This document shows, in pieces, positions 2,738 through 50,191 of a stretch of 64,000 bases of DNA. The DNA is taken from IMG/VR virus record IMGVR_UViG_3300042544_001590, positions 143,490 through 207,489 of that record, one strand, 5' to 3'. The notes beneath the pieces were generated by a model. That model saw only the letters and a list, made by a program, of their open reading frames with translations. It had not been told where the DNA came from and searched no databases. Numbering within the stretch: the stretch's first letter is position 1; each line of letters begins with the position of its first letter. The translations under genes were made by a program, and so were the position numbers.

Positions 2738-4387
2738 TCACTCATTCAAAAACAACCAATGAGCATAATTTATGGGTTTTTTAAATCCACGATCTCTATA
2801 CTCTCCGATGTTGTTGAGATGTCTGTCTTTATTGACCTGTTCGGTCATGTAACCCATGACACCTTCTTCATCTTCGGGATTATCTTTTTTGAGTTTGATT
2901 AGATATTTGGATATGGCATCAATTTTTTCATAATCTGGATCATCATCATCCATCATTTCTCTTAATTTTTCTTCAATTTCTGGTGCCGACAATCCAGCAA
3001 CTTCACCTTCAATATTAATCTTCGGTTTCTTTACACCCTTTTCCTTTAATTTTTTTTCAGCTTCCCATTTCTTACCTCGTTTTTCATATTCTCCTTGACG
3101 AATCATTCTCGCGTCTTCTCTAGATTGAGCTTTTTCAGCCTTTTCATCATCTCTTGAAGATTTACTCACTATTGATAGTTTAAGTTTCGATAGAATATTT
3201 CTCCAGTTTGATAATATTCCACTTTCTTCGTCAGTTATAATCCCCTCATTAACCAAATCATCCAGAAGACCATCATCCAAAGTATCATATACAGATTGAT
3301 ATCTGTCTTTCTTGAGTAGCATTTCCGCTTCGTTTTGGTATGAAGAAGTCTTTAAATTTCTTTTATAATATTTTAAAACCACTCCACCCGCATTACCCAT
3401 AACATTAATTATAAATTTTTGAATTTTTTCATCGGTGATGTCTTGATTAGATTCAATACGAGCCTCAATATTTCTCAGTACTTCATTAAATGTTGCTTGG
3501 GGGGTATTCTTCAACAAGTCTCTTTCATATTTGATGTTTTCTTGAGTGTCTAAACCCACACCTCTCATCTCTTCATCATTATCTTTATTCAAATTTGCAA
3601 TTTGTTGTTTATATGAAATCAACTGTTTTAGAGTATCCCTAAATATAGTAAGGGGAGTGTTGTTATCAACATCGAGTTCTGGTTGAACGAAATTTGTATC
3701 GGCATGATAGATAGACGAAGTTATACCTTTTGGTAATTTTTTAGATTTTTTAAGTTTTTGAATTATTGAACGGGCTTTATTTTGAATAATATAAGCCTCT
3801 TCCATACTCATACCAAACATTTCTTCTTTTTTTGCTGTTGTTCCATATGCGAAATTGGAGCTTCCTCTTTTTTGGAAGTGCTTATCAGCATAATCATAAA
3901 TATTTTTTTGATTTAATAATTTTTTTGCAAATTGCTGGGACAACGCAATTTCTGGATACGCTTTCACTATCAATCTCAACATAAATTCTTGTTGTAATTG
4001 TGTATTATCTGCATTTTTTGGAGCAAATTTAGCATATTCGGGTGTATATGCTCTTGTTTTTCTACTTCCTATTCTTTCTTCCGGCGTGAGTGGTCTGATT
4101 GCTAAATCTTGAACACTTTGGTCAAACCCAACACTTTTATTAATTCCAATCTTTGCAAGATTCTCCGCAGATAAAAAATTGAATAAAGATTTGGTCACGT
4201 ATTCCAACCTTCTATGTCCGAGAGTTGGGCTAGGTGGTGCTTTTGGGTGTCCTTTCATTATTCCCTGCACCTGTAAATATAAATTTTCAAAGTCTGGAAA
4301 TTCATTTCTCCAAAAGGGACTAAATCGAGCCATTTCGTTCAATACCTGCACTTTTTCCACTAGATAATCAAAGCCGTAATTTCTCAT
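2738..4387 (-). CDS. hypothetical protein, putative internal head/ejected protein
   Basis: 549 aa; TAAATA-N5-ATG upstream; N-terminus FDYLVEKVQVLNE. Confidence 0.6.
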   Translation of the reverse strand: MRNYGFDYLVEKVQVLNEMARFSPFWRNEFPDFENLYLQVQGIMKGHPKAPPSPTLGHRRLEYVTKSLFNFLSAENLAKIGINKSVGFDQSVQDLAIRPLTPEERIGSRKTRAYTPEYAKFAPKNADNTQLQQEFMLRLIVKAYPEIALSQQFAKKLLNQKNIYDYADKHFQKRGSSNFAYGTTAKKEEMFGMSMEEAYIIQNKARSIIQKLKKSKKLPKGITSSIYHADTNFVQPELDVDNNTPLTIFRDTLKQLISYKQQIANLNKDNDEEMRGVGLDTQENIKYERDLLKNTPQATFNEVLRNIEARIESNQDITDEKIQKFIINVMGNAGGVVLKYYKRNLKTSSYQNEAEMLLKKDRYQSVYDTLDDGLLDDLVNEGIITDEESGILSNWRNILSKLKLSIVSKSSRDDEKAEKAQSREDARMIRQGEYEKRGKKWEAEKKLKEKGVKKPKINIEGEVAGLSAPEIEEKLREMMDDDDPDYEKIDAISKYLIKLKKDNPEDEEGVMGYMTEQVNKDRHLNNIGEYRDRGFKKPINYAHWLFLNE

Positions 4388-4392
4388 ACTGT

Positions 4393-4415
4393 TATTTAGT
4401 CATAATAATTAAATA
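4393..4415. promoter_or_regulatory. back-to-back T4-type late promoters
   Basis: TATTTA 4393-4398 and TAAATA 4410-4415, each 5 nt from an ATG. Confidence 0.75.
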
Positions 4416-4420
4416 ATGTT

Positions 4421-5152
4421 ATGATTTCATTCTCACAATACTTTCTAATCAAAGAAGCGTTTGATACTGTCACCGAATTCATGTTAAATCCTGAAAATTC
4501 AGATAAGGATTATGATGAACTTATTGCAGAATTCGAGGCATCAGGTGGGGAGGTCATCGGTTCCGGTTCGTTTGGTATCGTGTATTCCCATCCTAAGTGG
4601 CCGTATGTTCTAAAGGTTTTCTCTTGGGATGATCCTTACTTAAAATTCGCTAGATATGCTCACGATAATCCTCATCCATCTTTTCCCAAATTCTTCGGCA
4701 AACCACAAAGAGTAGTCCCCCAATTCACACGATACAAGGACGAAGCAAAACAATATTTGGCTAGAATTGAAAGGCTTAATCCGACTCCTGTTAATGTTTT
4801 GGGACTAATAGATAATAATCTGATGCTTTATTTTCATTTGAAAGAAAATCCTAAATTAATACAAGATAGGACACAATTCATGAAATTGTCTTCCAAAGTT
4901 AAATCTTTACCAAAAGCTGTTTATAATCTGTTGGAAGGATGGTATCTGCTCCGCAGAGATTTACCTGATCTGAATCCCGATTTACACGGAGATAATGTGA
5001 TGATGCGAGATGATGGTCAATATGTTTGGGTTGATCCGGTCTGGACAGGAGATGAGAATATTGATAATCCTCTGACTGCCGCTATGACATCCAAGGATTA
5101 CGAACCTAGTAACATGCTTAAAGGAGGGAGAACAAAGTTGACTTCCCGATAA
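4421..5152 (+). CDS. protein kinase-like enzyme
   Basis: Gly loop GSGSFGIVY, VLKV lysine, catalytic loop DLHGDNVM, VWVDP. Confidence 0.8.
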   Translation: MISFSQYFLIKEAFDTVTEFMLNPENSDKDYDELIAEFEASGGEVIGSGSFGIVYSHPKWPYVLKVFSWDDPYLKFARYAHDNPHPSFPKFFGKPQRVVPQFTRYKDEAKQYLARIERLNPTPVNVLGLIDNNLMLYFHLKENPKLIQDRTQFMKLSSKVKSLPKAVYNLLEGWYLLRRDLPDLNPDLHGDNVMMRDDGQYVWVDPVWTGDENIDNPLTAAMTSKDYEPSNMLKGGRTKLTSR

Positions 5153-5165
5153 GACATGGTAAGGT
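5138..5165 (+). promoter_or_regulatory. sigma70-like early promoter
   Basis: TTGACT-N16-TAAGGT with extended TG, 6 nt before ATG 5172. Confidence 0.55.
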
Positions 5166-7764: not shown

Positions 7765-8262
7765 ATGAATAATTATTTCAAAGAATTGGGTTTAATTTAT
7801 GAAAATATTTTATTAGAGGCAAATTTATCAAATAAAAATCTTTTTTATGGCTTAAAAAGTATGCTGGATGGTGGAGATGATTTTGTATTGTTGACTGATA
7901 GAAACATCGACACGGACAACCAACAAACTATGAGTTGTCAATTTATTTATAAAGGAACTAGACATATTAAAGTTTTCACAGGAGCATTTTTTGAAAATAA
8001 AAATTATAATAATGTTTCACATATTACTGTTACTATATTTGAAGTAACCCCAGAGGGTAAAACAATATCTAAATTGGATACTAATGTATTCTATAATAAA
8101 GGTGGACACCTTGATCTTTCACACGATCCAGTAATATCTACGGTTGAGAATTTTGTAAAATATGTAAAATCAGTATTGGATAGGTCTGATAGGGATGGTG
8201 ATGATGAAATATTACCACCGAAATCTCCAAGCCCGATGAGTAAAAAATTGTTATCAGTTTGA
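7765..8262 (+). CDS. hypothetical protein, putative internal head protein
   Basis: AT-rich ORF with late promoter; N-terminus LIYENILLE-A. Confidence 0.6.
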   Translation: MNNYFKELGLIYENILLEANLSNKNLFYGLKSMLDGGDDFVLLTDRNIDTDNQQTMSCQFIYKGTRHIKVFTGAFFENKNYNNVSHITVTIFEVTPEGKTISKLDTNVFYNKGGHLDLSHDPVISTVENFVKYVKSVLDRSDRDGDDEILPPKSPSPMSKKLLSV

Positions 8263-12901: not shown

Positions 12902-13605
12902 ATTTAAATCTAAAGAAAAAAGAATTTCAATATCTCCTTCAAAGCCTCGCCCAAATCCATGACACGTGTGTTCTGGAACTGAGGGAAGATGGTATCCACG
13001 GGATTGCCTCCAGCGAGGATAATTCCATGTTTGCCCATGCTTATCTGTCAGGAGAGTATGAGGATCAGAATCTCAATCTACCTTCTCTGAAGAAGCTTTC
13101 CAAAGCTTTGGATATGATTTCTTCCGATGATATCAAGCTCAAGCTGAATAATAATCATCTGGAATACAAGAACAAGTCTCTGAAGTTCAAGTATCATCTC
13201 CATGAAGATGGGGTGATCACCAAACCGAAGTTGTCTCTGGAAAAGATTCGTAATTTTGAATACAATCTCCAATTTGATCTGGATTTTGAGTTCCTTTCCA
13301 ATGTTCTCCAAAAATCATCCATCACAAATACCAACAAGCTCTATCTATTTACTGAGAACGATTCTCTGGTGTGGAAGCTGGGGGATGAGACGGTTCCCAA
13401 TAGTGATACTCTGAGCATCGTGGGAGATGAGGTGGATTTTGAATTGGAATCTTTTATTCTAAAGATCGATAATCTAAAGCTGCTGTCCAAGGTATCCAAG
13501 ACGGGAAACATTTTCAAGATCAATTCCAAGCTTGGGGTCGGCTGCATCATCACGAAGAGTGGAGATTTTGAGATGGAATACATTTTATCGAGCCTTAAAA
13601 ACTAG
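12898..13605 (+). CDS. DNA polymerase sliding clamp (gp45-like)
   Basis: 235 aa with two-domain beta/alpha clamp pattern, in replication cluster. Confidence 0.7.
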   Translation: MNLNLKKKEFQYLLQSLAQIHDTCVLELREDGIHGIASSEDNSMFAHAYLSGEYEDQNLNLPSLKKLSKALDMISSDDIKLKLNNNHLEYKNKSLKFKYHLHEDGVITKPKLSLEKIRNFEYNLQFDLDFEFLSNVLQKSSITNTNKLYLFTENDSLVWKLGDETVPNSDTLSIVGDEVDFELESFILKIDNLKLLSKVSKTGNIFKINSKLGVGCIITKSGDFEMEYILSSLKN

Positions 13606-13613
13606 AATACAAT
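13595..13613 (+). promoter_or_regulatory. conserved TTAAAAACTAGA-H-TAnnnT motif, copy 1
   Basis: TTAAAAACTAGAATACAAT; TAG is the clamp stop codon. Confidence 0.7.
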
Positions 13614-14190: not shown

Positions 14191-14790
14191 ATGCGTCCGT
14201 TTTACGATTTTTATCTAGAGAAATTTTCTGATTTGGGTAAATTATCCCCCGAACAATTGAGAAAAGGTCAGAGACTTGATCCAAACAACCCCGATAACTT
14301 CCAACAGGTGAGCGGGAGGGTGTTTTCTCAAGCCCTTACCAACATCACAAAGAATGATGAATTTCGCCGAACGGTAAATCCAAAGTTTTTCAAGAATATC
14401 AAGAACAATCTCAGTGTTTATAAAGTTGAAGAATATCAGCGCATGAAATGTTTCCTTGGAAAGAACAATTCCAGTGGTTTTGCCATCAAGGATGGGGATG
14501 AATTGGTGTCAGTATTCTCTTCTCAAGAATCTTCTGGTAATGCGCTGGTTCAGGAAGCGATTCGGCAAGGTGCCACACGATTGGATTGTTTTGCCACACA
14601 AGATGAAAACGGTAATATCAAGGATGAGGGTTTATACAGGCTTTATAGTAGGAATGGGTTTGTGATTGACAAAACGCTGAACATGGACGGAGAATATCCT
14701 GTCAAGAATGGGATATCCTACTTCGTGGACGAAAATGGAAATGTTGATCCCACCAATCCTACCGTGGTGATCTTCATGGTTAAAAACTAG
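14191..14790 (+). CDS. GNAT-like domain protein, putative internal head protein
   Basis: ELVSVFS...GNALVQEAIRQGATRLDCF...LYSRNGF; TAAATA (14180)-N5-ATG. Confidence 0.55.
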   Translation: MRPFYDFYLEKFSDLGKLSPEQLRKGQRLDPNNPDNFQQVSGRVFSQALTNITKNDEFRRTVNPKFFKNIKNNLSVYKVEEYQRMKCFLGKNNSSGFAIKDGDELVSVFSSQESSGNALVQEAIRQGATRLDCFATQDENGNIKDEGLYRLYSRNGFVIDKTLNMDGEYPVKNGISYFVDENGNVDPTNPTVVIFMVKN

Positions 14791-14798
14791 AATACAAT
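14780..14798 (+). promoter_or_regulatory. conserved motif, copy 2
   Basis: TTAAAAACTAGAATACAAT-N7-ATG. Confidence 0.7.
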
Positions 14799-14805: not shown

Positions 14806-15102
14806 ATGAAGATACTTTATCCTGAAAAATATCAAGAAAACGCGCCAAAATCAGAAGATGTTGATTTTGATAATATCGTCAATTTTCACATTGGAAATAA
14901 TTTGTCTGGTTTTTTAGATACTGTTGTGATTGTGGTGGAACACTGTGTAAATGTTCATTATTTGAATTTTGAATCTTGGATTGAAGGAAGGGCGAATACC
15001 ATTTATGTGAAAACATTGGTTGATTGTAGATATCACTCTGATAATCTCAAGTTCTTGATTGAGAAATTTAGAAAAATTGAGGAGGTTTGGAATGAAGGAT
15101 GA
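14806..15102 (+). CDS. hypothetical protein
   Basis: 98 aa AT-rich ORF. Confidence 0.55.
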   Translation: MKILYPEKYQENAPKSEDVDFDNIVNFHIGNNLSGFLDTVVIVVEHCVNVHYLNFESWIEGRANTIYVKTLVDCRYHSDNLKFLIEKFRKIEEVWNEG

Positions 15103-15910
15103 TTTAAACATACGGGAGCTTTACCAAAAGATAATTGAGGAGAGGGCGGCAGCTAGAGGCGTGATCTTGATGGAAAATGTGAAGATTCCTTCCAATAATT
15201 CCAGTCCCGATCAGGTCAATTTTGATGGAAAGTCATATTCTTATGAATTGGGGGACGCTTTTTCCCTCATAGGAGACACACTTTACCATACGGAGAACAC
15301 CCACCCATACATTTTCAATTCACTTTTAAAAATTAAAAACGATCCAAAGGATTTTAAGAGGATATTAAAATCGTATTATGTGGAAATATGTGGAAAATTC
15401 AACAAATCCGATTTGGAATACTTTTTCAATAACCAGAAAGCGGAAAGCATGGGAGATACCAGAATCAACACTCAATCTGGAAGAATCTGGAAAGATATCA
15501 CCTCAACATCCGCTAAAAAGGATGTGTCGGTGGTGGTGTTTTGGTGTAGGGAGAAAGATATCCAACCGGACACGCTTAAAAAAATCAAGAAGTGTTTTAC
15601 TAAAAATGATATTTTTTGGGCTGCAACCGATTCCAAGAATTTCAACCATTTTGGGGATTCTTATCAAGACACTCCATCTGGAGAAATCAAGGAATTGAAA
15701 AGTAAAATATATCCAGAGCTTTCTCACGAAGATATTGTGGATATCCTGATGAGAGCGCATTCAAATTTCAAGATATCTCCCTTTGAGAAGAAGGTGGTGT
15801 GGGAATTCCGAGGAATCAACCCAGAAGATTTGAAAGTTATTGATGGAGGATACCCATCGGTGGCGGAATTCAGGGATAAACAAAAATTTAGCGAAAATTA
15901 TGAAAAATAA
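15092..15910 (+). CDS. hypothetical protein, putative internal head protein
   Basis: Likely ATG 15092; N-terminus IRELYQKIIEE. Confidence 0.6.
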   Translation: MKDDLNIRELYQKIIEERAAARGVILMENVKIPSNNSSPDQVNFDGKSYSYELGDAFSLIGDTLYHTENTHPYIFNSLLKIKNDPKDFKRILKSYYVEICGKFNKSDLEYFFNNQKAESMGDTRINTQSGRIWKDITSTSAKKDVSVVVFWCREKDIQPDTLKKIKKCFTKNDIFWAATDSKNFNHFGDSYQDTPSGEIKELKSKIYPELSHEDIVDILMRAHSNFKISPFEKKVVWEFRGINPEDLKVIDGGYPSVAEFRDKQKFSENYEK

Positions 15911-16559
15911 ATTTGATGAATTGTATGAACAGGTGATTATTGAAAGTGGTCTTTCAAGAGTATGGAGAAAGATTCAAAATCATTCTTCTGGCACCATCAC
16001 GGCTTTTAGGGGTGATGTCCCATATCAGCAGAATATTAGAAATAATAAAAAGATACTTGCTTATCTACAATCTAAAGGATATTCGGTGACATCTATTATG
16101 GGGACATACATTGAAAATTTTAGAGATGAAGAAAAAAAGGAGGAGATTCACGCTAGAAATGCTGGAGGTGATCCATATGATCCCGAAGAAAGACATGTTC
16201 AAGAAAGATCATTTTTAGTAGTAAATGATAGGGTGGAAGGTGATGATGGTGGTAAATTGGCGCACGATCTTTTTAAATTGGGGGTAGCTTTTGATCAGGA
16301 TTCGGTTATGATTATTCCCGTTGGTGGTAATAACGCATATCTGTGGGGAACATCCAAAAGAGAAGAATCGTATCCCGGTTACAATATCAAAGCTCCAGTT
16401 GGTAGTGGTAAATATGGAAAAACATCAGGAGCATTTTTATCTAAGATTAAGGGGCGAGAATTCGCGTTTGAGGCTATCAAATCACCACAAACCATAAATG
16501 GCAAGCGTGGTCAAATGATTTCGTTGAAAGAAGTTAAGAAACAACTCAATGAAATATAA
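15900..16559 (+). CDS. hypothetical protein, putative internal head protein
   Basis: Likely ATG 15900; MKNKFDELYEQVIIE-SGLSR, ITAFR, FDQDSV. Confidence 0.6.
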   Translation: MKNKFDELYEQVIIESGLSRVWRKIQNHSSGTITAFRGDVPYQQNIRNNKKILAYLQSKGYSVTSIMGTYIENFRDEEKKEEIHARNAGGDPYDPEERHVQERSFLVVNDRVEGDDGGKLAHDLFKLGVAFDQDSVMIIPVGGNNAYLWGTSKREESYPGYNIKAPVGSGKYGKTSGAFLSKIKGREFAFEAIKSPQTINGKRGQMISLKEVKKQLNEI

Positions 16560-20130: not shown

Positions 20131-20138
20131 AATATACT
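20120..20138 (+). promoter_or_regulatory. conserved motif, copy 4
   Basis: TTAAAAACTAGAATATACT-N6-ATG; TAG is the primase stop codon. Confidence 0.7.
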
Positions 20139-20144
20139 ACGATT

Positions 20145-20477
20145 ATGGAAATTGAAATTTTTGACCAACAAATTATTCAAAAAAAGTGGAAAAATTATGA
20201 TGCTCATACGCAAGATTATTTACCACATATTGGTTACGGTGCGTCTGGTACATATGACTCTATAACAAAAAAGGGAACGATTAGATCGTATATGAAAAAA
20301 TGTAAGGAACTTGAAAAGGCAGGTTACAAAAATTTAAAATTTTGTAACGGGGGCGATGACGACTGGTTGGTGGTAGATCACGATGCCAAAGAATTTGGAT
20401 TTTTTGAAGATTACGCTCCCTCTTTAGAAAGGGCTGTGAAATTTGACAACCTCACCACACTTTGGAATAATCATTGA
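20145..20477 (+). CDS. hypothetical protein
   Basis: 110 aa ORF after motif copy 4. Confidence 0.55.
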   Translation: MEIEIFDQQIIQKKWKNYDAHTQDYLPHIGYGASGTYDSITKKGTIRSYMKKCKELEKAGYKNLKFCNGGDDDWLVVDHDAKEFGFFEDYAPSLERAVKFDNLTTLWNNH

Positions 20478-20887
20478 GACTTTTTAGCAGTCATAAACGA
20501 TTGTTGAAGAGCAGCAAGATCAGAAGCAATGCGACCAATCTTCACTTGTTGATTCTTCAGATTGCCCAACATCGACTCAGGATTGGCGGTAGCCAGAACG
20601 CTCTGAATGCTGTTTGGTTGATCACCATTGAGATAACCAAGGAACTTATCAATATTTGCATTCCACTTATCAACAACACTAACCATTTGCTCATTCTGAC
20701 GAGCCATAGCATCCCCAATCTCATCAACAGCGGATGGATCAACTTCCATATCCACATCATAATCATCCATGGCAACATCGTCGTCTAAGGACATCTCAGC
20801 AGCATCGCGCTCCAAATCAGGATCGATGTCAAGTTGGGGAGCTTCTTGGAGAATACGGAGGAATTTAGCGTGGAATTTATTAGCCAT
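20471..20887 (-). CDS. acidic hypothetical protein, putative head core protein
   Basis: Late promoter; N-terminus KFLRILQE-A. Confidence 0.6.
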   Translation of the reverse strand: MANKFHAKFLRILQEAPQLDIDPDLERDAAEMSLDDDVAMDDYDVDMEVDPSAVDEIGDAMARQNEQMVSVVDKWNANIDKFLGYLNGDQPNSIQSVLATANPESMLGNLKNQQVKIGRIASDLAALQQSFMTAKKSQ

Positions 20888-20892
20888 ACCTT

Positions 20893-20915
20893 TATTTAGT
20901 CAAAAGTGTTAAATA
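20893..20915. promoter_or_regulatory. back-to-back late promoters
   Basis: TATTTA 20893 and TAAATA 20910, each 5 nt from an ATG. Confidence 0.75.
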
Positions 20916-20920
20916 TCTAT

Positions 20921-21271: not shown

Positions 21272-21286
21272 AAACTAGACTACAAT
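21268..21286 (+). promoter_or_regulatory. conserved motif, copy 5
   Basis: TTAAAAACTAGACTACAAT-N5-ATG. Confidence 0.7.
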
Positions 21287-37103: not shown

Positions 37104-37109
37104 TGTTAT

Positions 37110-37133
37110 TATTTAGGAGGATGATATTAAATA
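37110..37133. promoter_or_regulatory. back-to-back late promoters
   Basis: TATTTA 37110 (N6 to ATG) and TAAATA 37128 (N5 to ATG 37139). Confidence 0.75.
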
Positions 37134-37138
37134 ATCAT

Positions 37139-38419
37139 ATGGAATTTGATAAGCTGTATCGTGAATTGATGTTGGAGTTCTCGGAAGGAGCGATCCGTAA
37201 CATTGTGAAGAAATTCCAAAACGATGCCACGGAACAAGAAATCCGTAGAGAGGTTCAGGATTTTGAAAAGTATAAGAACGCTTTACAAAAGAAAGACCCT
37301 TTCCAATATAAATCGTGGATAGAGTTCACGGAAGCGATCCATGCTGCAAAGGGTAAGGCTGAATTTAAAAGGAAAAAAGCACCAACCCAAGATGTTGTTG
37401 CCAATCAGGATGATATCATAGCCGATGATGAGAACGTGACCATCTATCGGGGAGATTCCCAAGACAAGTGCGTGTTATATGGAAAGGGTTATTCTTTCTG
37501 TATCTCAAGACAGGTTGGAGGTAATATGTTCTCTAACTATCGTTTGGGTAAAGAATCTACATTCTATTTCATATATTTCAAGAAGAAACCGAAGAGTGCG
37601 GTTGACCATATTATGGTGTTGGATCATACCAAGCATGGGTATGAATGGACTTTTGCCGATAATGATACTAAAAAGGTGAATGGTGGGTGGGATGAGGTGG
37701 TGGGTAAATATCCAGAATTAAAGAAATATGAAAAATTATTAGTTAATAAAAAGTTGGATGATGAAGAGAGTGAATTTATAAAAGTGTTAAAGAATTTTTC
37801 TAAAAATCCAAGATTAGAAAATTTTAATAAATTCTCTTATGAACAAAAAGCACAAGCTCTTAAAAGTGTTGTTGATTTAAGTGATCAAATATGGAACGCT
37901 TTAGATTCTACTTTGAGAAATGAATTTTTGAGCATAGGTCCAAATTTAACAAAACATCAAGCATTTAATCTTAAACCTAATGAAATTGAACGGTATAAAA
38001 AAACAAGAAATCTTTCCAGACAACATTTAATTGATGATTATAAATATAAGGAAAATATATTTGATTTTTCAGATGATGAAAGATTGGCATTGGAGTATAT
38101 GGAAAAAGTTGGAAGTTCAAAATTTTTCAAAGATGATAGATTATCTAATAAAAAATTAAAGTTTGAAACATCTAATGATTATGAAAGGTCTATTTATGAC
38201 TTGGTTTTTGATGAAAACGGTGCATTAGTGACATATCAAAATATTGTAAGAGATGTTTTTGGGGGGAATCCAGATGATGTTTTATACATAAAGTATGATA
38301 CGAATGGAAATATTATTAATATTGAATCAAGCTATGATGATATTGAAGATACTTCAAATTATAATGAATCTATCCATTTTGATAAATATTATCAAAAGAT
38401 AATGTCAAGTCTCTTTTAA
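37139..38419 (+). CDS. hypothetical protein, putative internal head protein
   Basis: MEFDKLYRELMLE; lies antisense between gp25 and gp6. Confidence 0.6.
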   Translation: MEFDKLYRELMLEFSEGAIRNIVKKFQNDATEQEIRREVQDFEKYKNALQKKDPFQYKSWIEFTEAIHAAKGKAEFKRKKAPTQDVVANQDDIIADDENVTIYRGDSQDKCVLYGKGYSFCISRQVGGNMFSNYRLGKESTFYFIYFKKKPKSAVDHIMVLDHTKHGYEWTFADNDTKKVNGGWDEVVGKYPELKKYEKLLVNKKLDDEESEFIKVLKNFSKNPRLENFNKFSYEQKAQALKSVVDLSDQIWNALDSTLRNEFLSIGPNLTKHQAFNLKPNEIERYKKTRNLSRQHLIDDYKYKENIFDFSDDERLALEYMEKVGSSKFFKDDRLSNKKLKFETSNDYERSIYDLVFDENGALVTYQNIVRDVFGGNPDDVLYIKYDTNGNIINIESSYDDIEDTSNYNESIHFDKYYQKIMSSLF

Positions 38420-38901: not shown

Positions 38902-40740
38902 TTACCAATTCTTGCAGCTTTCGGCTTTGGGGGTTCCGGGTTTCGCTTTATCGCAACCATGTCTTGCTCGAAATGCTTTCTTTCTATCAGTGTTTCCACT
39001 ATCACCAGTTGCTTTCACACCTTTTTGTCCAAAATGGATTCTTTTATAACCCGAACCATCGGGGTCTTTTACACATTTAGTATATTTTTTACCCTTACGA
39101 TCACTGGATGCTTTTTGAGTAACTTTGGTGCATTTCTTGGATTTTTCTAAGAACACGGCAACTTCCTGAAGATCAATCATGAAGTCGTTGATATCAACAT
39201 TGAAAGATGATGCGTATTTGTTTGCCAATTCATCAAAGGATTCGTTCACCGTTCCTTCATCTCTCATTCCTTGCACGGTGGACAACAATTGCGTTGCACT
39301 GTTAGCACCACTTCTGGTTATAGACCAAAATCCCTTGAGTCGTGAATTGATAATATCCTTGGATGTTTTATTAAATGGTAAATTCTTGACAAGTTTCTTT
39401 AATTCTGGGATGGCGGCATTCCATTGATCCTTTGACTTGATTTCTTCCAATTTCTTGATGAACTCTTCCATTGCCATATAACGGGGATCAACATCCAAAT
39501 TCTCCAAAGGAATGGTTTTTCTTTCCATACCTCGACCCGCAATGGAATTGAAGAATTTTTGTAATGATTGTGCTGGAAGTTCTCCGACTCTCCGCATCAC
39601 TCCAATGTTTATGTTGCGATTCAATGTGCGGGGATCAAAATTTTCCAATCCTCTATCGAATCGATTTACATGATAATCAATAAATGAAAATATGGGATTA
39701 TCATCAGTTGTTAATTTTTTCAATAATCCCAATTTATAAAGAAAATCTGTTTTATTAACATTTAAAAAATCAACCCCGGTGGGTATTTCACTATCTGATA
39801 TTCCATGCTCTATTTTTAACATATCCAATATCCCTGCTGCTTTGTTGTTGATTAAACTTTTCACCTTCGCCAATACAGTATCATTGGATTTCATATTGTT
39901 GGATGTTTTTGTTTCTATTTTTGAATTTATTTCTTCAAATCGTTCATCCGCAGCGTTTGAAGCCTTTATAGCATTTATCAATTTTTTTTCAGCATCTTCT
40001 AATTTACTTTGAACGGAAGATAATTTTTTAACATCTTGTAAAAGAATAGATAATTCTATCTCCGCTTGCTGGATTTGACCGCTTAGGGTTTCCTTTTTTT
40101 CTTTAATCCTAGTATTCTTTTTTTCGGTTTTTTTTCTTTGGATAAAGGATTTGATTTGATCGATTCTATCACTACCATATAAAGAACTATCAAGAATTTC
40201 TTTGAGTCTATTCACTTCGTCTCTCGCATCCGAAGCTTGTCCCGCTCTTTTTTGTTGAGAGACGAGAGCATTATTCCACTCTTTTTCATTATCATCATTT
40301 ATAGTATCTATTCTTAATCCTCCTACCAGTTTAATTTTACCATCTATATCTTCTTTCTTTTCACCGCTGTATATTTTTTTAAAATCTTCAAAGAATGTTT
40401 TGGAATTGAATAGGATTGCAAAAGCATTAGCCATTTCTCTATCTCGCGCAGCTTTCAATTCATAGGTATCCTGTTGACTAACACCTTTGGAGGTGTCATA
40501 AAGATATTTTTTCATCTGATCTATTGGTTTTTGCTTTTCAAAATTGTCAACTTTGCCAACAGGACTGGACGAATAACCAGAGGAAGTTGATGCTCCAGCA
40601 ACTCCCCCATCGGCTGTAATACCAGCTTGTTGCCCACTGATATTCTGTGGTCCTATATTTCGTTGCGCCCTAAAATACGCATCTCCCCCGCGAGTTCCCT
40701 TTGCTTCCAGCGCCAAATTATATAAATCATCAAAGTTCAT
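38902..40740 (-). CDS. coiled-coil protein with basic C-terminal domain, putative internal head protein
   Basis: MNFDDLYNLALE-A; C-terminal IHFGQ...RKKAFRARH.C. Confidence 0.6.
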   Translation of the reverse strand: MNFDDLYNLALEAKGTRGGDAYFRAQRNIGPQNISGQQAGITADGGVAGASTSSGYSSSPVGKVDNFEKQKPIDQMKKYLYDTSKGVSQQDTYELKAARDREMANAFAILFNSKTFFEDFKKIYSGEKKEDIDGKIKLVGGLRIDTINDDNEKEWNNALVSQQKRAGQASDARDEVNRLKEILDSSLYGSDRIDQIKSFIQRKKTEKKNTRIKEKKETLSGQIQQAEIELSILLQDVKKLSSVQSKLEDAEKKLINAIKASNAADERFEEINSKIETKTSNNMKSNDTVLAKVKSLINNKAAGILDMLKIEHGISDSEIPTGVDFLNVNKTDFLYKLGLLKKLTTDDNPIFSFIDYHVNRFDRGLENFDPRTLNRNINIGVMRRVGELPAQSLQKFFNSIAGRGMERKTIPLENLDVDPRYMAMEEFIKKLEEIKSKDQWNAAIPELKKLVKNLPFNKTSKDIINSRLKGFWSITRSGANSATQLLSTVQGMRDEGTVNESFDELANKYASSFNVDINDFMIDLQEVAVFLEKSKKCTKVTQKASSDRKGKKYTKCVKDPDGSGYKRIHFGQKGVKATGDSGNTDRKKAFRARHGCDKAKPGTPKAESCKNW

Positions 40741-40745
40741 ACTAT

Positions 40746-40768
40746 TATTTAGAACAAATGACTAAATA
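40746..40768. promoter_or_regulatory. back-to-back late promoters
   Basis: TATTTA 40746 and TAAATA 40763, each 5 nt from an ATG. Confidence 0.75.
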
Positions 40769-40773
40769 ATCCT

Positions 40774-41541
40774 ATGGGCAAGAAATTTGATGCTATCTAT
40801 GAAGCTGTTGTGAGTCGTTCCGAAGTGGGGGGTTATCTTCCCGGCGATATCATAAAATTTAGGGATGGATATAAAAACACGGAAACTTACAAGTATATGC
40901 CATTCACTCTCAGGAAAGAAGTGGATGAATTGGCGACTTGCGGATTGAACATCAAAGTCGTTCAGGTTGGAGACAAACAATCAGGATATTCCATTGGAAA
41001 TCAATTCAAACCAGCATCCCAGATCGTTCTCACCATTGCTGCTGATCATGGTGGTGGTAGAACTTATGGTAGAGTGGTTGTCTGTCCCGCCATGGTTGAT
41101 ATGGTGGATGTGAGCGCAGGAGTTCCGGTTCCCGATCAATTCAAGCGCAAGGATACTGTCATCATCAAGCCCAAACCCTTAAAAATTGATCCAAAGATCA
41201 TCACCAATGTCACTGACAAGGGAAATGGTAAGAATACCCCCACCGATCTGAAATTGGCGGGAGAATCCAAGGCTTGGGAATCCACCAAGGAATTGGCTGA
41301 TTTGTATATGGAATCTTTGGGGGAGGTTCCCCTGAGAAATATGCCTCCAGAAAAATCTTTAGGGGAGGTTCCTCGGCGTGATCCGAACACACAACCCCCA
41401 ACAAAAAACAGATTGAATTTGCTTTATGATAGATTACCAGAACTTAAAAAAGCTATAGAAGATGTGAGGTATGGTTCTTTTAAAGAGTTCTATAACAAAA
41501 TTTCAGAGTTTAAGGATTTTCTTGATAACGAGTTTGTTTAA
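40774..41541 (+). CDS. hypothetical late protein
   Basis: MGKKFDAIYE; duplicated SLGEVP.R near the C-terminus. Confidence 0.6.
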   Translation: MGKKFDAIYEAVVSRSEVGGYLPGDIIKFRDGYKNTETYKYMPFTLRKEVDELATCGLNIKVVQVGDKQSGYSIGNQFKPASQIVLTIAADHGGGRTYGRVVVCPAMVDMVDVSAGVPVPDQFKRKDTVIIKPKPLKIDPKIITNVTDKGNGKNTPTDLKLAGESKAWESTKELADLYMESLGEVPLRNMPPEKSLGEVPRRDPNTQPPTKNRLNLLYDRLPELKKAIEDVRYGSFKEFYNKISEFKDFLDNEFV

Positions 41542-41569: not shown

Positions 41570-42286
41570 ATGGCACAATATAATAACAAAGATCAGCGCA
41601 ATCTGGAAGAACTCCTTGAAGAAGGGTGGATGGATCGTCTCAAGGCACGGGGAGCCGAAGCTTTGGGTTCCGTCAAAGGAGTGGGGCAACAAATCAAAGG
41701 TGGCTTTCAACAAGCTGCTGGCAGTGGCTTGAGTAAGGCTGGAGATTGGCTTGAAAGCGATAAGATTTCTCGTAAAGGGGATAAATACACGCAACAAGGT
41801 CAAAAAAGTGAGCGAGAAGGAAGCGTCTCTGGTCACAATGCCAAAGTCCAGTATCTTCAGAAGAATATTGACAAACGTATTGACTCATTTGTTGCCGATA
41901 TCAAAAATGATATTAAAAAGCTTGGTCTGGACATTGGTAACATTGAAATCGTGTCTGGTATCAATGCTGCTCTTGGACAACTCAAGAAAAGCGTGAGCGG
42001 TGCAACACCTCCTCCTTTACCACAACAATCTGGCGCAACACCTCCTCCTTTACCCCAACAATCTGGCGCAACACCCCCACCACTTCCAAAACAACAAACA
42101 CCGGAGCCAGAAGAGGATGAGCCGGAAAATCCCGTGGAATACTCTTACAGAAAAGCTATTAGTAGGAAGAAAAAAACACAACCAAACACTAATCCCCGTA
42201 AAAGTAAGGTGAGAAAAGACCCATTTGCAAAATATGCCGCTCCCGAACAGGAAGAGGATTTGGACAAGATGTTTTGGGAACGCTAA
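41570..42286 (+). CDS. hypothetical late protein with PPPLP repeats
   Basis: TAAATA-N5-ATG 41570; LEELLEE-G. Confidence 0.6.
   Translation: MAQYNNKDQRNLEELLEEGWMDRLKARGAEALGSVKGVGQQIKGGFQQAAGSGLSKAGDWLESDKISRKGDKYTQQGQKSEREGSVSGHNAKVQYLQKNIDKRIDSFVADIKNDIKKLGLDIGNIEIVSGINAALGQLKKSVSGATPPPLPQQSGATPPPLPQQSGATPPPLPKQQTPEPEEDEPENPVEYSYRKAISRKKKTQPNTNPRKSKVRKDPFAKYAAPEQEEDLDKMFWER
41996..42094 (+). repeat. 3 x 33-bp coding tandem repeat (SGATPPPLPQQ)
   Basis: Seen directly. Confidence 0.9.
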
Positions 42287-47908: not shown

Positions 47909-47920
47909 CTAAATAATGAT

Positions 47921-48289: not shown

Positions 48290-48293
48290 TTAT

Positions 48294-49322
48294 ATGAAAA
48301 AACAACCGACATTGGGAGATATATATGGACAAATGCTGAACAGTGTTCAAGTCGTTCAAGAGAACGCACAGGAAAACATCAACAAGTCCAAAAAAATTCC
48401 CAAGCAATCCAAAAACGCTTTCAACGAAACAAATCCCTTGCAAAAAGGTGGTCCATCTGAGAAAAGCGGTTATCACAAAGCTCTGAATGATACTTATGAT
48501 GAGGATGAAGAGCGTAAGTATGCTAATCTTGATAAACTTAAAGAAAAGTTGAAGAATCCCAATCTTTCTGATAAACAGAAGGAATCTCTCAAAAAAGAAA
48601 TTGCAAGAATGGAGAGTGGAATCCAAAGAGAGGAAGCGGAAGAGAGAATTCACAAGGAATCTAAAAAAATTGCAAGAGATAGACTAAATACATTTATGAC
48701 TAAGAAATCTACATTTGATAAGTTGTTTGAATCCGTTATGGGTAATAATTTTGACCAGCAAGAGGATGCTCAAGAAGTTGATGCCCTCGGCCTTGGTGAT
48801 GCTCCCATGGACGATGAGTTTGGAGATGACGAATTCGGTGACGACGAAGACCAAGTTACATTTACTCTTGATCGTGCCACAGCACAAAAGCTTCACGATG
48901 TTTTGATGGGAGTTCTTGATGGTGGTGGTATGGAAGATGAAGGCGATGATCTGGACTTCGATACTGAAGATGATTTTGGAGGAGACGATGAAATGGACGA
49001 AGACAACGAAGAAGAAGACGATTTCTCCTATGACGAAGACGAAGAGCGCGGAACCTTCCCAACTGACAAGGTTGGTAATGATGGAACCGTTGGTGCCAAG
49101 GATGGCAAAGGTGGTGGTCAACAACACAAGCTCCAAGGTCGTAGCAATAAGGTCAATGGTCGTCCTCAACCAAAAGGTCAAAAAACCAAGGTAGTGGGAA
49201 CCACTGACAAGGTTGGTAATGACGGTGATTACGGTCATGCTCTCCATGGTGCAAAGCAACCCGATATGGGCAAGCAGAACAAAGTTTCAGACATTCGCCA
49301 AGCGGAAGATTTCTTCCGTTGA
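48294..49322 (+). CDS. acidic low-complexity protein, possible prohead core/scaffold, with nested start at 48696
   Basis: Asp/Glu-rich; internal TAAATA-N5-ATG; TDKVGNDG twice. Confidence 0.55.
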   Translation: MKKQPTLGDIYGQMLNSVQVVQENAQENINKSKKIPKQSKNAFNETNPLQKGGPSEKSGYHKALNDTYDEDEERKYANLDKLKEKLKNPNLSDKQKESLKKEIARMESGIQREEAEERIHKESKKIARDRLNTFMTKKSTFDKLFESVMGNNFDQQEDAQEVDALGLGDAPMDDEFGDDEFGDDEDQVTFTLDRATAQKLHDVLMGVLDGGGMEDEGDDLDFDTEDDFGGDDEMDEDNEEEDDFSYDEDEERGTFPTDKVGNDGTVGAKDGKGGGQQHKLQGRSNKVNGRPQPKGQKTKVVGTTDKVGNDGDYGHALHGAKQPDMGKQNKVSDIRQAEDFFR

Positions 49323-49345
49323 ATGTGAATTAAAAAAATAAACCT

Positions 49346-49380
49346 AAGAAGAGGGGATCGTGATGATTCCCTCTTTTTTT
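49346..49380 (+). terminator. intrinsic terminator
   Basis: AAGAGGGGATC-GTGAT-GATTCCCTCTT followed by a T run. Confidence 0.85.
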
Positions 49381-49393
49381 GTTAAGTATTATC

Positions 49394-50191
49394 ATGAAGT
49401 CCTTTCTGGAATTTTTTGAAGAGCGTAACGGTGTTCTATTGGAATACCGTCACAGGGATGGTTTTGGGGGTATTAAACAATCCCTCCATGCCAACAACAA
49501 AAAAGGGGGCAACATCACCCGTGATCCTCTGACACGCAAGATACCATGGAACAAAGGACCGTATAAGAAAATCAGAACAGCGGGAGAGATTCTGATCGGA
49601 GATGATCTGTTGAAAGAATTGGGTTCTATGGGAGGCGTGGAGTTCAAGGATGGTAAGGAGATCAAAAGAAAAAATAGTAATCAAATTTTAAAATTGTTCA
49701 CAAATCTTCATGGACAACAATGTGGAAAAATAGTGGAGGTAAAAAACCGAAACGCTTTTACTGAAAAAACAGATTATTATGGTAATTGTGTTGATCTGTG
49801 TAATCAATTTACTGTCGATACTGATGAAGATGATTATGACGGTGATTATGAAAATTATTATGAAGATGATGGTAGCGGCGCAGCAGAATGGATGATCAAC
49901 GTTTTATCAAATGATAATAATGTTATTAGGTTAAACAAAGAAACCTTTGATCAGTATGTAGACATTTCAGGTATCCCACAAGACAGAATTGAAAATTTAT
50001 CAAGTGATGAGTATTATTATATTATAGATGGTAGAGGACACCCTAACGGATATGTTAATTTTGTTTTATATGGTGAGAATAGGAATGGTGATGATATACA
50101 TTATTTTTTCAATGTATCACCTGATCCTAATTTAGAAAATAAAAAATTGCCGAAATTGCCAAATGGATATGGGGCAGGTTCTAATATGTGA
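49394..50191 (+). CDS. hypothetical protein, putative internal head protein
   Basis: TAAGTA-N5-ATG; MKSFLEFFEE. Confidence 0.6.
   Translation: MKSFLEFFEERNGVLLEYRHRDGFGGIKQSLHANNKKGGNITRDPLTRKIPWNKGPYKKIRTAGEILIGDDLLKELGSMGGVEFKDGKEIKRKNSNQILKLFTNLHGQQCGKIVEVKNRNAFTEKTDYYGNCVDLCNQFTVDTDEDDYDGDYENYYEDDGSGAAEWMINVLSNDNNVIRLNKETFDQYVDISGIPQDRIENLSSDEYYYIIDGRGHPNGYVNFVLYGENRNGDDIHYFFNVSPDPNLENKKLPKLPNGYGAGSNM

What the first reader, a model, noticed from the sequence alone, without database searches (positions are those of the whole stretch)
2738..50191. About 14 unrelated proteins share a capsid-targeting-like N-terminal peptide: a candidate packaged effector repertoire
Seen: starts at 4387(-) FDYLVEKVQVLNE, 4421 FSQYFLIKE, 7765 LIYENILLE, 14191 FYDFYLE, 15092 ELYQKIIEE, 15900 FDELYEQVIIE, 20887(-) KFLRILQE, 37139 FDKLYRELMLE, 40740(-) FDDLYNLALE, 40774 FDAIYE, 41570 LEELLEE, 48294 DIYGQML...VVQE, 48696 FDKLFE and 49394 MKSFLEFFEE. 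Eleven of these have their own TAAATA/TAAGTA-N5-ATG, even inside replication clusters. Similar peptides recur internally (NESFDELANKY, NESIHFDKYYQKIM, ELADLYMES). Known: T4 internal proteins carry a short N-terminal capsid targeting sequence (MKTYQEFIAE) cleaved by gp21 after (I/L)xE. Inference: promoter + targeting peptide + interchangeable cargo forms a portable cassette that loads diverse proteins into the head for injection.
Basis: partly seen in the sequence, partly recalled or inferred. Interest (0 to 1): 0.8.

Follow-up and report, generated by a model that had tools for sequence, protein, structure and literature searches.

The report
Shared N-terminal leader on late phage proteins
A lake-water relative of phage T4 puts the same short N-terminal peptide, ending in a protease-type cut site, on about ten unrelated late proteins; this most likely loads them into the capsid as T4 does with its internal proteins, but no virion data exist.

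Summary
The peptides and TAARTA-N5-ATG signals are at the stated coordinates. The window is the last 64 kb of a 207-kb uncultured T4-like myophage from lake water. That phage encodes a gp21-type prohead protease, a scaffold-like protein and a Gp23 capsid protein.

The shared leader is real but uneven. Five proteins (15900, 37139, 40740-, 40774, 48696) carry a strict FDx[LI][YF] motif, found nowhere else in 19.8 k residues. Six more are moderately supported: 15092, 4387-, 7765, 4421 and 20887, plus 14191 and 49394, which copy the layout of T4's MKTYQEFIAE. 41570 and 48294 are weak. 48294 and 48696 are one nested ORF.

Comparative data support a portable leader:
- Different cargo follows the same leader at syntenic sites.
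- A domain that starts leaderless in a podophage carries the leader in IMG/VR contigs.
- An IMG/VR scan found 88 leader ORFs in 15 unrelated cargo groups.
- The unselected leader end is hydrophobic-hydrophobic-Glu then Ala/Ser.
- Glu12 is invariant in 39 of 39 homologues found without using the N-terminus.

Capsid targeting with cleavage is the best explanation (0.55) but is inferred. The main rival is a sliding-clamp-binding motif, because the polymerase ends in LDDLFGE. This is a new variant of a known kind.

The parts
15900..16559 (+). Strong leader (MKNKFDELYEQVIIE|S) on a 219-aa S-AdoMet-lyase-like protein. It has no TAAATA of its own and overlaps the end of the 15092 gene.
   Evidence: Strict motif. 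Profile p=0.0009. PF23780 E=1.2e-9, 38.7 bits against a cut-off of 28; the domain starts at residue 32, so about 30 aa are an N-terminal extension.
37139..38419 (+). Strong leader (MEFDKLYRELMLE|F) on a 426-aa ORFan. It has a TAAATA-N5-ATG signal and carries a second motif copy at its extreme C-terminus (HFDKYYQKIMSSLF).
   Evidence: At the syntenic site in L004 a 210-aa protein shares only the first 11 residues.
38902..40740 (-). Strong leader (MNFDDLYNLALE|A) on a 612-aa basic protein with a C-terminal DUF5754-like domain. It has a TAAATA-N5-ATG signal.
   Evidence: A search by residues 60-612 gave 39 of 39 full-length homologues with the leader; Glu12 is 100% and the next residue is Ala in 92%. 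The leader block is the most conserved in the protein.
40774..41541 (+). Strong leader (MGKKFDAIYE|A) on a 255-aa protein that is highly conserved in the clade. It is transcribed divergently from 40740.
   Evidence: M1, G2, K3, K4, F5, D6 and E10 are invariant in 5 relatives.
48696..49322 (+). Strong leader (MTKKSTFDKLFE|S) on an acidic 208-aa product. It starts at an internal in-frame ATG that has its own TAAATA-N5 signal inside ORF 48294-49322.
48294..49322 (+). Full-length 342-aa product of the same ORF (MKKQPTLGDIYGQMLNSVQVVQE). Weak leader candidate.
   Evidence: Profile p=0.04. No TAAATA here, but the L004 copy has one. The ORF is continuous in three phages.
15092..15910 (+). Moderate leader (MKDDLNIRELYQKIIEE) on a 272-aa ORFan. 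It is preceded by a GGAGG Shine-Dalgarno sequence, not by TAAATA.
   Evidence: Profile p=0.003. Upstream sequence.
2738..4387 (-). Moderate leader (MRNYGFDYLVEKVQVLNE) on a 549-aa ORFan with a TAAATA-N5-ATG signal.
   Evidence: Profile p=0.011. Regex hit. The leader is conserved in a relative that is 53% identical overall (L034).
4421..5152 (+). Moderate leader (MISFSQYFLIKE|A) on a 243-aa kinase-like protein (GSGSFG...VLKV...DLHGDNV). It has a TAAATA-N5-ATG signal and is divergent from 4387.
   Evidence: At the syntenic site L034 has an unrelated 240-aa protein that starts MNEFDKLFEKVLTE behind TAAATA-N5.
7765..8262 (+). Moderate leader (MNNYFKELGLIYENILLE|A) on a 165-aa ORFan with a TAAATA-N5-ATG signal.
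   Evidence: Profile p=0.013.. A paralogous leader (MDNYFKDLSMIYENLDME) sits on an unrelated 93-aa late protein elsewhere in the genome.
20471..20887 (-). Moderate leader (MANKFHAKFLRILQE|A) on an acidic 138-aa protein with a TAAATA-N5-ATG signal.
   Evidence: Regex hits. Conserved in L030. Not above background on the FDxLY profile (p=0.08).
14191..14790 (+). T4-CTS-layout leader (MRPFYDFYLE: aromatic at 4, F7, Y8, E10) on a 199-aa protein with a TAAATA-N5-ATG signal.
   Evidence: In L030 this leader family is joined to the C-terminal 129 aa of the 15900 protein.
49394..50191 (+). T4-CTS-layout leader (MKSFLEFFEE, compare T4 MKTYQEFIAE) on a 265-aa protein with a TAAGTA-N5-ATG signal.
   Evidence: The relatives' versions are 118 aa.
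41570..42286 (+). Weak candidate (MAQYNNKDQRNLEELLEE) on a basic 238-aa protein. It has SGATPPPLPQQ repeated three times and a conserved C-terminal LDKMFWER. It has a TAAATA-N5-ATG signal.
   Evidence: Profile p=0.19. The C-terminus is conserved in L004 and L008. Sequence.

Best explanation
The peptides are a lineage-specific counterpart of the T4 capsid targeting sequence.

Proposed mechanism:
1. A T4-type late promoter (TAARTA) sits so that the mRNA starts at or next to the ATG.
2. The first 10-18 codons encode an acidic amphipathic helix. Hydrophobic residues fall at i, i+3, i+4, i+7 and i+8. The typical form is M-x-F-D-x-L-Y-x-x-h-h-E.
3. This helix docks the protein onto the scaffolding core while the prohead assembles.
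4. The gp21-type protease then cuts after the conserved Glu, in the context (L/I/V)-x-E followed by A or S.
5. The mature cargo stays in the head with the DNA and enters the next cell with it.

Shown here: the shared leader; its conservation at the protein level; its attachment to unrelated and exchangeable cargo; its link with late signals; and the presence of protease, scaffold-like and capsid genes.

Inferred: docking, cleavage, packaging and injection.
For: 1. Statistics in the window.
- The strict motif occurs only next to start codons, 5 of 5.
- The T4-shaped pattern is about 12-fold enriched at N-termini, p=7e-7.
- [LIVM]xE followed by A or S is about 5-fold enriched in residues 5-20.
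- The list is linked to late signals, p=5e-4. None of the recognisable tail, baseplate or terminase late genes has the peptide.

2. Selection acts on the protein.
- Synonymous codon changes occur within the conserved leader.
- The motif sits at variable offsets from the ATG: residues 3, 5, 6 or 7.

3. Portability.
- L004 has a 210-aa protein sharing only MEFDxLYRxLM with the 426-aa 37139 protein at the same site.
- L034 has an unrelated protein behind MNEFDKLFEKVLTE where the window has 4421.
- L030 has a chimera of one leader with another gene's C-terminal part.
- A small basic domain starts directly in podophage HTVC111P. In IMG/VR contigs it carries MTFDKLYTSLMEAFDEDAE in front.
- The IMG/VR scan gave 101 matches. 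88 are in ORFs of at least 50 aa, forming 26 leader types and 15 unrelated cargo groups.

4. A cleavage-site signature that the search did not select for.
- Positions 10-13 are L/V/I, L/M/I/V, E, then E/A/S.
- [LIVM]xE occurs in 22 of 26 leader types against 10% background.
- In 39 homologues of the 40740 protein, found without using the N-terminus, Glu12 is 100% and Ala follows in 92%. Tyr7 is only 74%.

5. Machinery. L040 carries PF03420 Peptidase_S77, a 295-aa scaffold-like protein and PF07068 Gp23.

6. T4 precedent.
- Read from the T4 record: IPII and IPIII MKTYQEFIAE, gp24 MAKINELLRE and Alt MELITELFDE share hydrophobic 4, 7, 8 and E10.
- 49394 and 14191 have the same layout.
- Published work places targeting at residues 4 and 7 and processing at 8 and 10 (PMC9026906). 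The CTS is the only conserved part of diverse T-even internal proteins (PMC3012670, PMC8442874).

7. Context. In L117 and L137 a 92-aa basic leader protein lies one to several genes from the capsid, scaffold and protease genes.
Against: - There is no virion proteome, no N-terminal processing data and no cultured relative.
- The FDxLY class has no sequence similarity to the T4 CTS. T4 propeptides score about 0 on its profile.
- Its first half (hydrophobic-D-x-L-[YF]) looks more like the T4-family clamp-binding tail.
- The head-core proteins themselves (protease, scaffold-like protein, capsid protein) lack the leader.
- Some cleavage contexts depart from (L/I)xE, for example MLE in 37139, ALE in 40740 and YLE in 14191.
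- 15092 and 15900 lack their own late signal and lie downstream of a different promoter-like motif.
- Several bearers are large (426-612 aa) or conserved core genes, unlike the small T4 internal proteins.
- Part of the ortholog evidence was ascertained through the leader itself. One search corrects this for one family only.
Confidence: 0.55

Rival explanations
1. The peptide is a sliding-clamp-binding motif, comparable to N-terminal PIP boxes in eukaryotes. It would tether diverse, mostly basic and possibly DNA-binding late proteins to the phage gp45-type clamp on replicating or packaging DNA.
For: - The phage's DNA polymerase ends ...VELDDLFGE.
- T4 gp43 ends SLDFLFG and T4 gp55 ends SLDFLYEAND. 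All have hydrophobic-D-x-L-[FY], like the leader's F-D-x-L-Y(-E).
- The 37139 protein ends HFDKYYQKIMSSLF and the 41570 protein ends EEDLDKMFWER. Both C-termini are conserved in relatives.
- From general knowledge, clamp-binding peptides are portable and sit at extreme termini of unrelated proteins.
Against: - The bearers are late-signal proteins of no recognisable replication or repair function. The recognisable replication proteins lack the N-terminal peptide.
- In the unbiased homologue set the aromatic residue, which should be critical for a clamp pocket, is only 74% conserved and is replaced by C, V or A. The downstream Glu is 100% and Ala 92%.
- The conserved unit extends 5-6 residues past the clamp-like core as h-h-E.
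- The same genome has T4-CTS-layout leaders without the D-x-L core (49394, 14191).
- The phage's gp55 homologue has no such tail.
- Ten abundant late clamp binders would compete with the polymerase (inference).
Confidence: 0.12
2. The helix is a docking peptide for some other shared partner, such as an assembly chaperone, a membrane assembly site or a regulatory protein. The proteins would then not be packaged or cleaved.
For: The data show only a conserved, portable, acidic amphipathic N-terminal helix on late proteins. No result identifies its partner. The 40740, 40774 and 41570 genes are conserved core genes beside baseplate genes, so they could be assembly factors.
Against: It does not explain the invariant Glu followed by Ala or Ser at the leader's end. 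It also does not explain the T4-CTS layout of 49394 and 14191. No such system is known in T4-like phages, whereas the CTS is.
Confidence: 0.2
3. The similarity is a by-product of nucleotide-level constraints, such as leaderless translation start, initial transcribed sequence or AT-rich codons, or it is chance.
For: The ATG lies where a T4-type late promoter would start transcription (TAARTA-N5-ATG), so the first codons could be constrained as RNA. The loosest members of the list do not differ from background. A ZOOPS expectation-maximisation run on all N-termini overfits, which shows how easily weak helical motifs appear.
Against: - Synonymous variation occurs inside the conserved peptide.
- The offset from the ATG varies.
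- Fifteen late-signal genes, including tail, baseplate and terminase genes, have the same signal without the peptide.
- The strict motif is exclusively N-terminal.
- Unselected positions 10-13 are conserved.
Confidence: 0.04

Closest known systems
T4 capsid targeting sequence on internal proteins IPI, IPII, IPIII and Alt, and the gp24 propeptide
   Same: - A short N-terminal peptide is the only shared part of otherwise unrelated proteins.
- It forms an acidic amphipathic helix with hydrophobic residues at i, i+3 and i+4.
- It ends in (L/I)-x-Glu followed by Ala or Ser.
- The phage encodes a gp21-type protease, a scaffold-like protein and a gp23-type capsid protein.
- Cargo is exchangeable between relatives.
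- 49394 (MKSFLEFFEE) matches MKTYQEFIAE at M1, K2, E6, F7 and E10.
   Different: - The main class has its own consensus, M-x(1-5)-F-D-x-L-Y-x-x-h-h-E. It is 12-15 aa long, with the acid at i+1 rather than i+2.
- It shows no detectable similarity to the T4 peptide.
- There are about 10 bearers in 64 kb, against 4-5 in all of T4.
- Cargos reach 612 aa and are not all basic.
- The promoter-like signal abuts the ATG.
- Packaging and cleavage are untested.
Propeptides of head and ejection proteins in giant phages (phiKZ, 201phi2-1, SPN3US)
   Same: These are N-terminal propeptides, removed after Glu by a T4-related prohead protease. They are proposed to target proteins into the prohead, and their N-termini are conserved on diverged paralogues (PMC5694885).
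   Different: Most of those propeptides exceed 100 residues, and their cleavage motif is A/S/G-x-E. Here the leaders are 10-18 residues with a hydrophobic P3 residue.
T4-family sliding-clamp-binding tails (gp43 SLDFLFG, gp55 SLDFLYEAND)
   Same: They share a hydrophobic-D-x-L-[FY] core and are portable terminal peptides. This phage's polymerase ends LDDLFGE.
   Different: Those tails are C-terminal and sit on replication or transcription proteins. Here the peptide is N-terminal, sits on late ORFans, is extended by h-h-E-A/S, and the Glu is more conserved than the aromatic residue.
Encapsulin cargo-loading peptides
   Same: A short terminal peptide directs unrelated cargo into an HK97-fold shell. 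This is an analogy from general knowledge only.
   Different: Those peptides are usually C-terminal, are not cleaved, have a different sequence, and do not involve a scaffold or protease.

Membership tests
T4-type capsid targeting sequence / internal head proteins | A short N-terminal peptide shared by otherwise unrelated proteins of one phage | tested here: met
   The strict motif occurs only at N-termini. The protein bodies are unrelated. Enrichment p=7e-7.
T4-type capsid targeting sequence / internal head proteins | The peptide ends in the prohead-protease site, (L/I)-x-Glu then a small residue | tested here: met
   22 of 26 leader types have [LIVM]xE, against 10% background. Glu12 is 100% and Ala follows in 92% of 39 homologues. 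In the window, 8 against 1.6 expected. Some members deviate (MLE, ALE, YLE). This is a sequence test only; cleavage was not tested.
T4-type capsid targeting sequence / internal head proteins | The phage encodes a gp21-family protease, a gp22-like scaffold and a gp23 capsid protein | tested here: met
   L040 carries PF03420 Peptidase_S77, a 295-aa scaffold-like protein and PF07068 Gp23. The scaffold assignment rests on position and composition only.
T4-type capsid targeting sequence / internal head proteins | Sequence similarity to the T4 peptide MKTYQEFIAE | tested here: inconclusive
   49394 and 14191 share the layout hydrophobic 4, 7, 8 and E10. The main FDxLY class does not: T4 propeptides score about 0 on its profile.
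T4-type capsid targeting sequence / internal head proteins | The same leader on exchangeable cargo in related phages | tested here: met
T4-type capsid targeting sequence / internal head proteins | The proteins are present in virions with the peptide removed, and the peptide is sufficient to package a foreign protein | not testable with these tools
   The phage is uncultured and from lake metagenomes. No proteome exists and no RNA run was listed.
T4-family sliding-clamp-binding motif | Core hydrophobic-D-x-L-[FY] | tested here: met
   The leader F-D-x-L-Y compares with this phage's polymerase tail LDDLF and with T4 LDFLF and LDFLY.
T4-family sliding-clamp-binding motif | Sits at the extreme C-terminus of replication or late-transcription proteins | tested here: not met
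   The leaders are N-terminal and sit on late ORFans. Only the 37139 and 41570 proteins have additional C-terminal copies.
T4-family sliding-clamp-binding motif | The terminal aromatic residue is the most constrained position | tested here: not met
   Tyr7 is 74% conserved and is replaced by C, V or A, whereas Glu12 is 100%.
T4-family sliding-clamp-binding motif | Physical binding to the clamp | not testable with these tools
   No complex prediction or assay is available. The clamp gene was not found in the 102.7 kb read.

The most novel reading that the evidence does not exclude
Uncultured T4-like phages of lakes and oceans would use a previously undescribed leader (M-x-F-D-x-L-Y-x-x-h-h-E then A or S), fused to a leaderless late promoter, as a plug-in cassette. 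The cassette would load a dozen or more unrelated proteins per phage into the capsid for co-injection. The cargo would include enzyme-like proteins (S-AdoMet-lyase-like, kinase-like) and small basic domains. That would be a much larger and more modular injected arsenal than the four or five proteins known in T4, with at least 15 cargo families across public viral contigs.
Probability: 0.4. Interest if true: 0.75.

Novelty: new variant of a known kind. Interest (0 to 1): 0.6.

Why it matters
Proteins injected with phage DNA act before any phage gene is expressed. They are therefore prime candidates for first-strike counter-defence; T4 IPI blocks GmrSD, and T4 IPIII is needed on some hosts.

If this leader is a capsid address label, a simple sequence rule would pick out the injected proteome of a large group of uncultured aquatic T4-like phages directly from metagenomes. 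At least 15 cargo families were seen here, among them an S-AdoMet-lyase-like and a kinase-like protein.

It would also supply a second, unrelated targeting tag for packaging foreign proteins into T4-type heads.

If the peptide turns out to bind the clamp instead, it would be the first N-terminal PIP-like motif set in a phage. That would also be new.

Tried and rejected
- De novo ZOOPS expectation-maximisation on all 76 N-termini. It converged on a weak helix motif covering 42% of proteins. This was overfitting, so I replaced it with strict patterns, a leave-one-out profile and internal-window nulls.
- Nucleotide and protein searches of cultured phages with the window, the 612-aa protein and the 426-aa protein. 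There was no useful relative.
- PHROGs, Pfam and PDB sequence searches of the cargos. Most are ORFans.
- ESM Atlas search for the 426-aa protein. It returned only unnamed viral clusters below the reliability range.
- AlphaFold2 model of the 40774 protein with 5 orthologues. Mean pLDDT was 39.9, so the model was unusable and I ran no fold search.
- tblastn of Rhizobium-phage head proteins against the window and the first loci. Nothing matched; I found the head module only by walking along the contig.
- RNA runs to map transcript starts. None was listed, so I did not use read laying.
- The variable-gap cassette pattern would have given thousands of chance hits in IMG/VR (estimated). I used a fixed-spacing pattern instead.
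- I first took L034:9274 to be the orthologue of 4421. BLASTP shows it is unrelated, so it counts as different cargo at the same site, not as leader conservation.
- The helicase N-terminus (6424, MSEIDFDYFEKVLV) is probably a false positive. It has no late signal and scores only p=0.036 on the profile. From memory, T4 gp41 has a similar stretch in its N-terminal domain; I did not check this with a tool.

Full report
WHAT THE WINDOW IS

The same phage occurs as a 167,851-bp JGI contig and in many lake-water metagenomes.

It is a distant T4-like myophage.
- The large terminase (51085-52854) is about 37% identical to those of Pseudoalteromonas, Rhizobium and cyanobacterial T4-likes.
- The tail sheath is 54855-57257 and the tail tube is 59176-59745.
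- A baseplate and fibre block lies on the minus strand.
- RecA/UvsX, a DnaB-type helicase, gp32 and a B-family polymerase are present.
- There is no close cultured relative.

Walking along the JGI contig reached the head module in L040. It holds a Peptidase_S77 (gp21-family) prohead protease, a basic 133-aa protein, a 295-aa scaffold-like protein and a Gp23-family major capsid protein.

THE OBSERVATION

Eleven follow TAA[AG]TA-N5-ATG.

That signal is strongly over-represented, with 22 matches against 2.2 expected. It also precedes tail, baseplate and terminase genes, so it behaves as the late promoter. In T4 the late element TATAAATA spans about -13 to -6 (my own knowledge). If the same holds here, the A of the ATG is the transcription start, and these mRNAs would be leaderless. 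This is inferred; no RNA run was listed.

The protein bodies are unrelated by BLASTP. However, 48294 and 48696 are one ORF. 48696 is an internal in-frame start whose TAAATA lies inside the coding sequence, and this is conserved in two relatives.

IS THE PEPTIDE MORE THAN CHANCE?

- The strict pattern FDx[LIFMV][YF] occurs five times in 19,795 residues, always 3-7 residues after a start Met.
- A leave-one-out BLOSUM profile, compared with internal windows of the same proteome, gives p<=0.0014 for those five. It gives p=0.003-0.016 for 15092, 4387-, 7765 and 4421. It does not separate 48294, 20887, 14191, 41570 or 49394 from background.
- A pattern shaped on the T4 peptide, [FY]xx[FLIM][FYIVL]x{0,1}E at residues 2-10, hits 8 of 77 proteins against 0.69 expected. 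It adds 14191, 20887 and 49394.
- A T4-style cut site, [LIVM]xE followed by A or S in residues 5-20, occurs in 8 proteins against 1.6 expected. Six of them are on the list.
- Listed proteins are concentrated among late-signal genes: 10 of 25 against 3 of 51 (p=5e-4).

My grading is five strong, about seven moderate (including two with the T4 layout), and two weak (41570, 48294).

The helicase at 6424 shows that the loose motif can arise by chance. My first de novo expectation-maximisation run overfitted.

COMPARATIVE EVIDENCE

Relatives at 27-81% identity were fetched.

1. Selection acts on the protein. Leader codons show synonymous changes (TTT/TTC, TTA/TTG/CTA/CTT, GCG/GCA) while the residues stay the same. 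The motif also sits at different offsets from the ATG.

2. Cargo is exchanged behind the leader.
- In L004, at the site between the baseplate gene and the neighbouring gene, a 210-aa protein shares only MEFDxLYRxLM with the window's 426-aa protein.
- In L034 an unrelated 240-aa protein starting MNEFDKLFEKVLTE, behind TAAATA-N5, occupies the 4421 site.
- L030 has a 158-aa protein made of a 14191-type leader and the C-terminal 129 residues of the 15900 protein.
- The 7765 leader recurs on an unrelated 93-aa late protein elsewhere in the genome.

3. The leader is an add-on.
- The S-AdoMet-lyase domain of 15900 starts at residue 32.
- A small basic domain that begins directly at the Met in podophage HTVC111P carries MTFDKLYTSLMEAFDEDAE in front of it in many IMG/VR contigs.

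4. Scan of IMG/VR with TAAATA-N5-ATG-x-F-D-x-L-Y.
- It gave 101 matches. Thirteen lie in ORFs of at most 20 aa, which I read as chance hits. The other 88 lie in ORFs of at least 50 aa.
- These form 26 leader types and 15 cargo groups with no mutual similarity.
- 37 of 100 loci show T4-like marker genes in their short flanks.

5. Positions the pattern did not constrain are conserved. Position 10 is L/V/I, position 11 is L/M/I/V, and positions 12-13 are Glu then E/A/S. [LIVM]xE occurs in 22 of 26 types against 10% of background windows.

6. An unbiased test.
- One search had used the leader itself as a search word. I therefore searched the 5.8-billion-protein set with residues 60-612 of the 40740 protein only.
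- All 39 full-length homologues start M-[NK]-F-[DENT]-x-L. I used this pattern to set their starts, so M1, F3 and L6 are fixed by selection.
- Among positions not selected, Glu12 is invariant, Ala follows in 92% and Leu9 is 87%. Tyr7 is only 74%.
- The leader block is the most conserved 13 columns of the protein.

7. Context. In L117 and L137 a 92-aa basic leader protein lies one to several genes from the capsid, scaffold and protease genes.

COMPARISON WITH T4

From the T4 record, IPII and IPIII start MKTYQEFIAE, gp24 starts MAKINELLRE and Alt starts MELITELFDE. All have hydrophobic residues at positions 4, 7 and 8 and Glu at 10.

The literature says three things.
- Residues 4 and 7 carry targeting, and residues 8 and 10 carry processing (PMC9026906).
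- The peptide is cut off by gp21, and it can package foreign proteins (PMC8442874).
- It is the only conserved part of a diverse set of injected anti-defence proteins (PMC3012670; bioRxiv 10.1101/2022.04.14.488369).

49394 (MKSFLEFFEE) and 14191 (MRPFYDFYLE) copy this layout. The main FDxLY class shares only the hydrophobic spacing and the terminal (L/I/V)-x-Glu then Ala/Ser. By profile it is not similar to the T4 peptide.

THE MAIN RIVAL

This phage's polymerase ends VELDDLFGE. T4 gp43 ends SLDFLFG and T4 gp55 ends SLDFLYEAND. The first half of the leader, hydrophobic-D-x-L-[YF], therefore looks like the family's sliding-clamp-binding tail. Two bearers also have conserved C-terminal copies.

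Points against this rival:
- The bearers are late ORFans, not replication proteins.
- The aromatic residue is less conserved than the downstream Glu and Ala.
- The conserved unit runs on as h-h-E.
- T4-layout leaders in the same genome lack the D-x-L core.
- The phage's gp55 homologue has no such tail.

I give this rival 0.12. I give an unknown shared partner 0.20, nucleotide-level constraint or chance 0.04, and capsid targeting with cleavage 0.55.

CARGO

Only two cargos give functional hints.
- 15900 matches S-AdoMet lyase above Pfam's threshold.
- 4421 has GSGSFG...VLKV and DLHGDNV, a T7-kinase PHROG hit and weak kinase N-lobe matches.

The 40740 family and the small proteins share a basic Cys-containing DUF5754-like domain. 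Calling the set an 'effector repertoire' is therefore a hypothesis. 40740, 40774 and 41570 are conserved across all relatives and may be structural.

VERDICT

The concept is known from T4. What is new here is the leader consensus, its fusion to a start-abutting late signal, the size of the repertoire (about ten bearers in 64 kb, plus three more in a further 38.7 kb) and its spread over many uncultured aquatic phages.

None of packaging, cleavage or injection has been observed.

Noticed in passing
window-wide, e.g. 4385-4398(-), 37128-37141(+), 54844-54857(+), 59165-59178(+): TAARTA-N5-ATG occurs 22 times against 2.2 expected. The spacing places the A of the ATG where a T4-type late promoter would start transcription, so most late mRNAs of this phage may be leaderless. 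A few genes (15092, 53112) have classical GGAGG sites instead.
   Followed up: partly
4385-4423, 20885-20923, 37090-37141, 40738-40776: Four back-to-back divergent late-signal pairs. Each has the two ATGs only about 35 bp apart and a near-palindromic TATTTA...TAAATA arrangement.
   Followed up: no
13598-13611, 14783-14796, 20123-20136, 21271-21284 (+): A second recurring upstream motif, AAAACTAGAMTAYA, occurs 4 times against 0.08 expected. Each copy lies about 8-10 nt before an ATG of a small gene. It may be an early or middle promoter, again with almost no 5' leader.
   Followed up: partly
48294-49322 (+), internal start 48696: Nested in-frame genes, giving a 342-aa product and a 208-aa product. 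The internal start has its own late signal encoded within codons R-L-N-T. The arrangement is conserved in L004 and L008.
   Followed up: partly
C-terminal codons of 37139-38419 and 41570-42286; L025:5556-8045: Conserved C-terminal peptides on two leader proteins (HFDKYYQKIMSSLF and EEDLDKMFWER) resemble the polymerase's C-terminal LDDLFGE tail. They could be clamp-binding tails or C-terminal propeptides like the one on T4 Alt.
   Followed up: partly
41570-42286 (+): The protein contains a threefold tandem repeat, SGATPPPLPQQ, in a proline-rich linker.
   Followed up: no
57328-59154 (+): A 608-aa HNH/homing-endonuclease-like gene lies between the tail sheath and tail tube genes. Residues 422-577 show a weak Mom-like match.
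   Followed up: no
62077-64000 (+): A long ORF of more than 640 aa with weak tape-measure matches runs off the window. Two independent contigs, one IMG/VR and one JGI, both end within 5 bp of the same point inside it. This suggests a repeat or hypervariable stretch that breaks assemblies.
   Followed up: partly
assembled sequence upstream of the window (gp55 homologue); window 2082-2726(-): The gp55-type late sigma homologue (149 aa) ends EGDEYDDND and lacks the clamp-binding tail that T4 gp55 has. A Mom-family protein (PF25680) and several glycosyltransferases suggest that the DNA is modified.
   Followed up: no
L036:28453-29172 (Rhizobium phage RHph_I1_18): In this cultured T4-like phage the unannotated gene between the portal and protease genes starts MKKFGDFLED. 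This has the T4-CTS layout and could be tested in a cultured system.
   Followed up: no
54247-54642 (+): A 131-aa protein starts MKNKFDEFILF, identical to 15900 over the first seven residues. It lacks both a TAAATA signal and a following Glu site.
   Followed up: no
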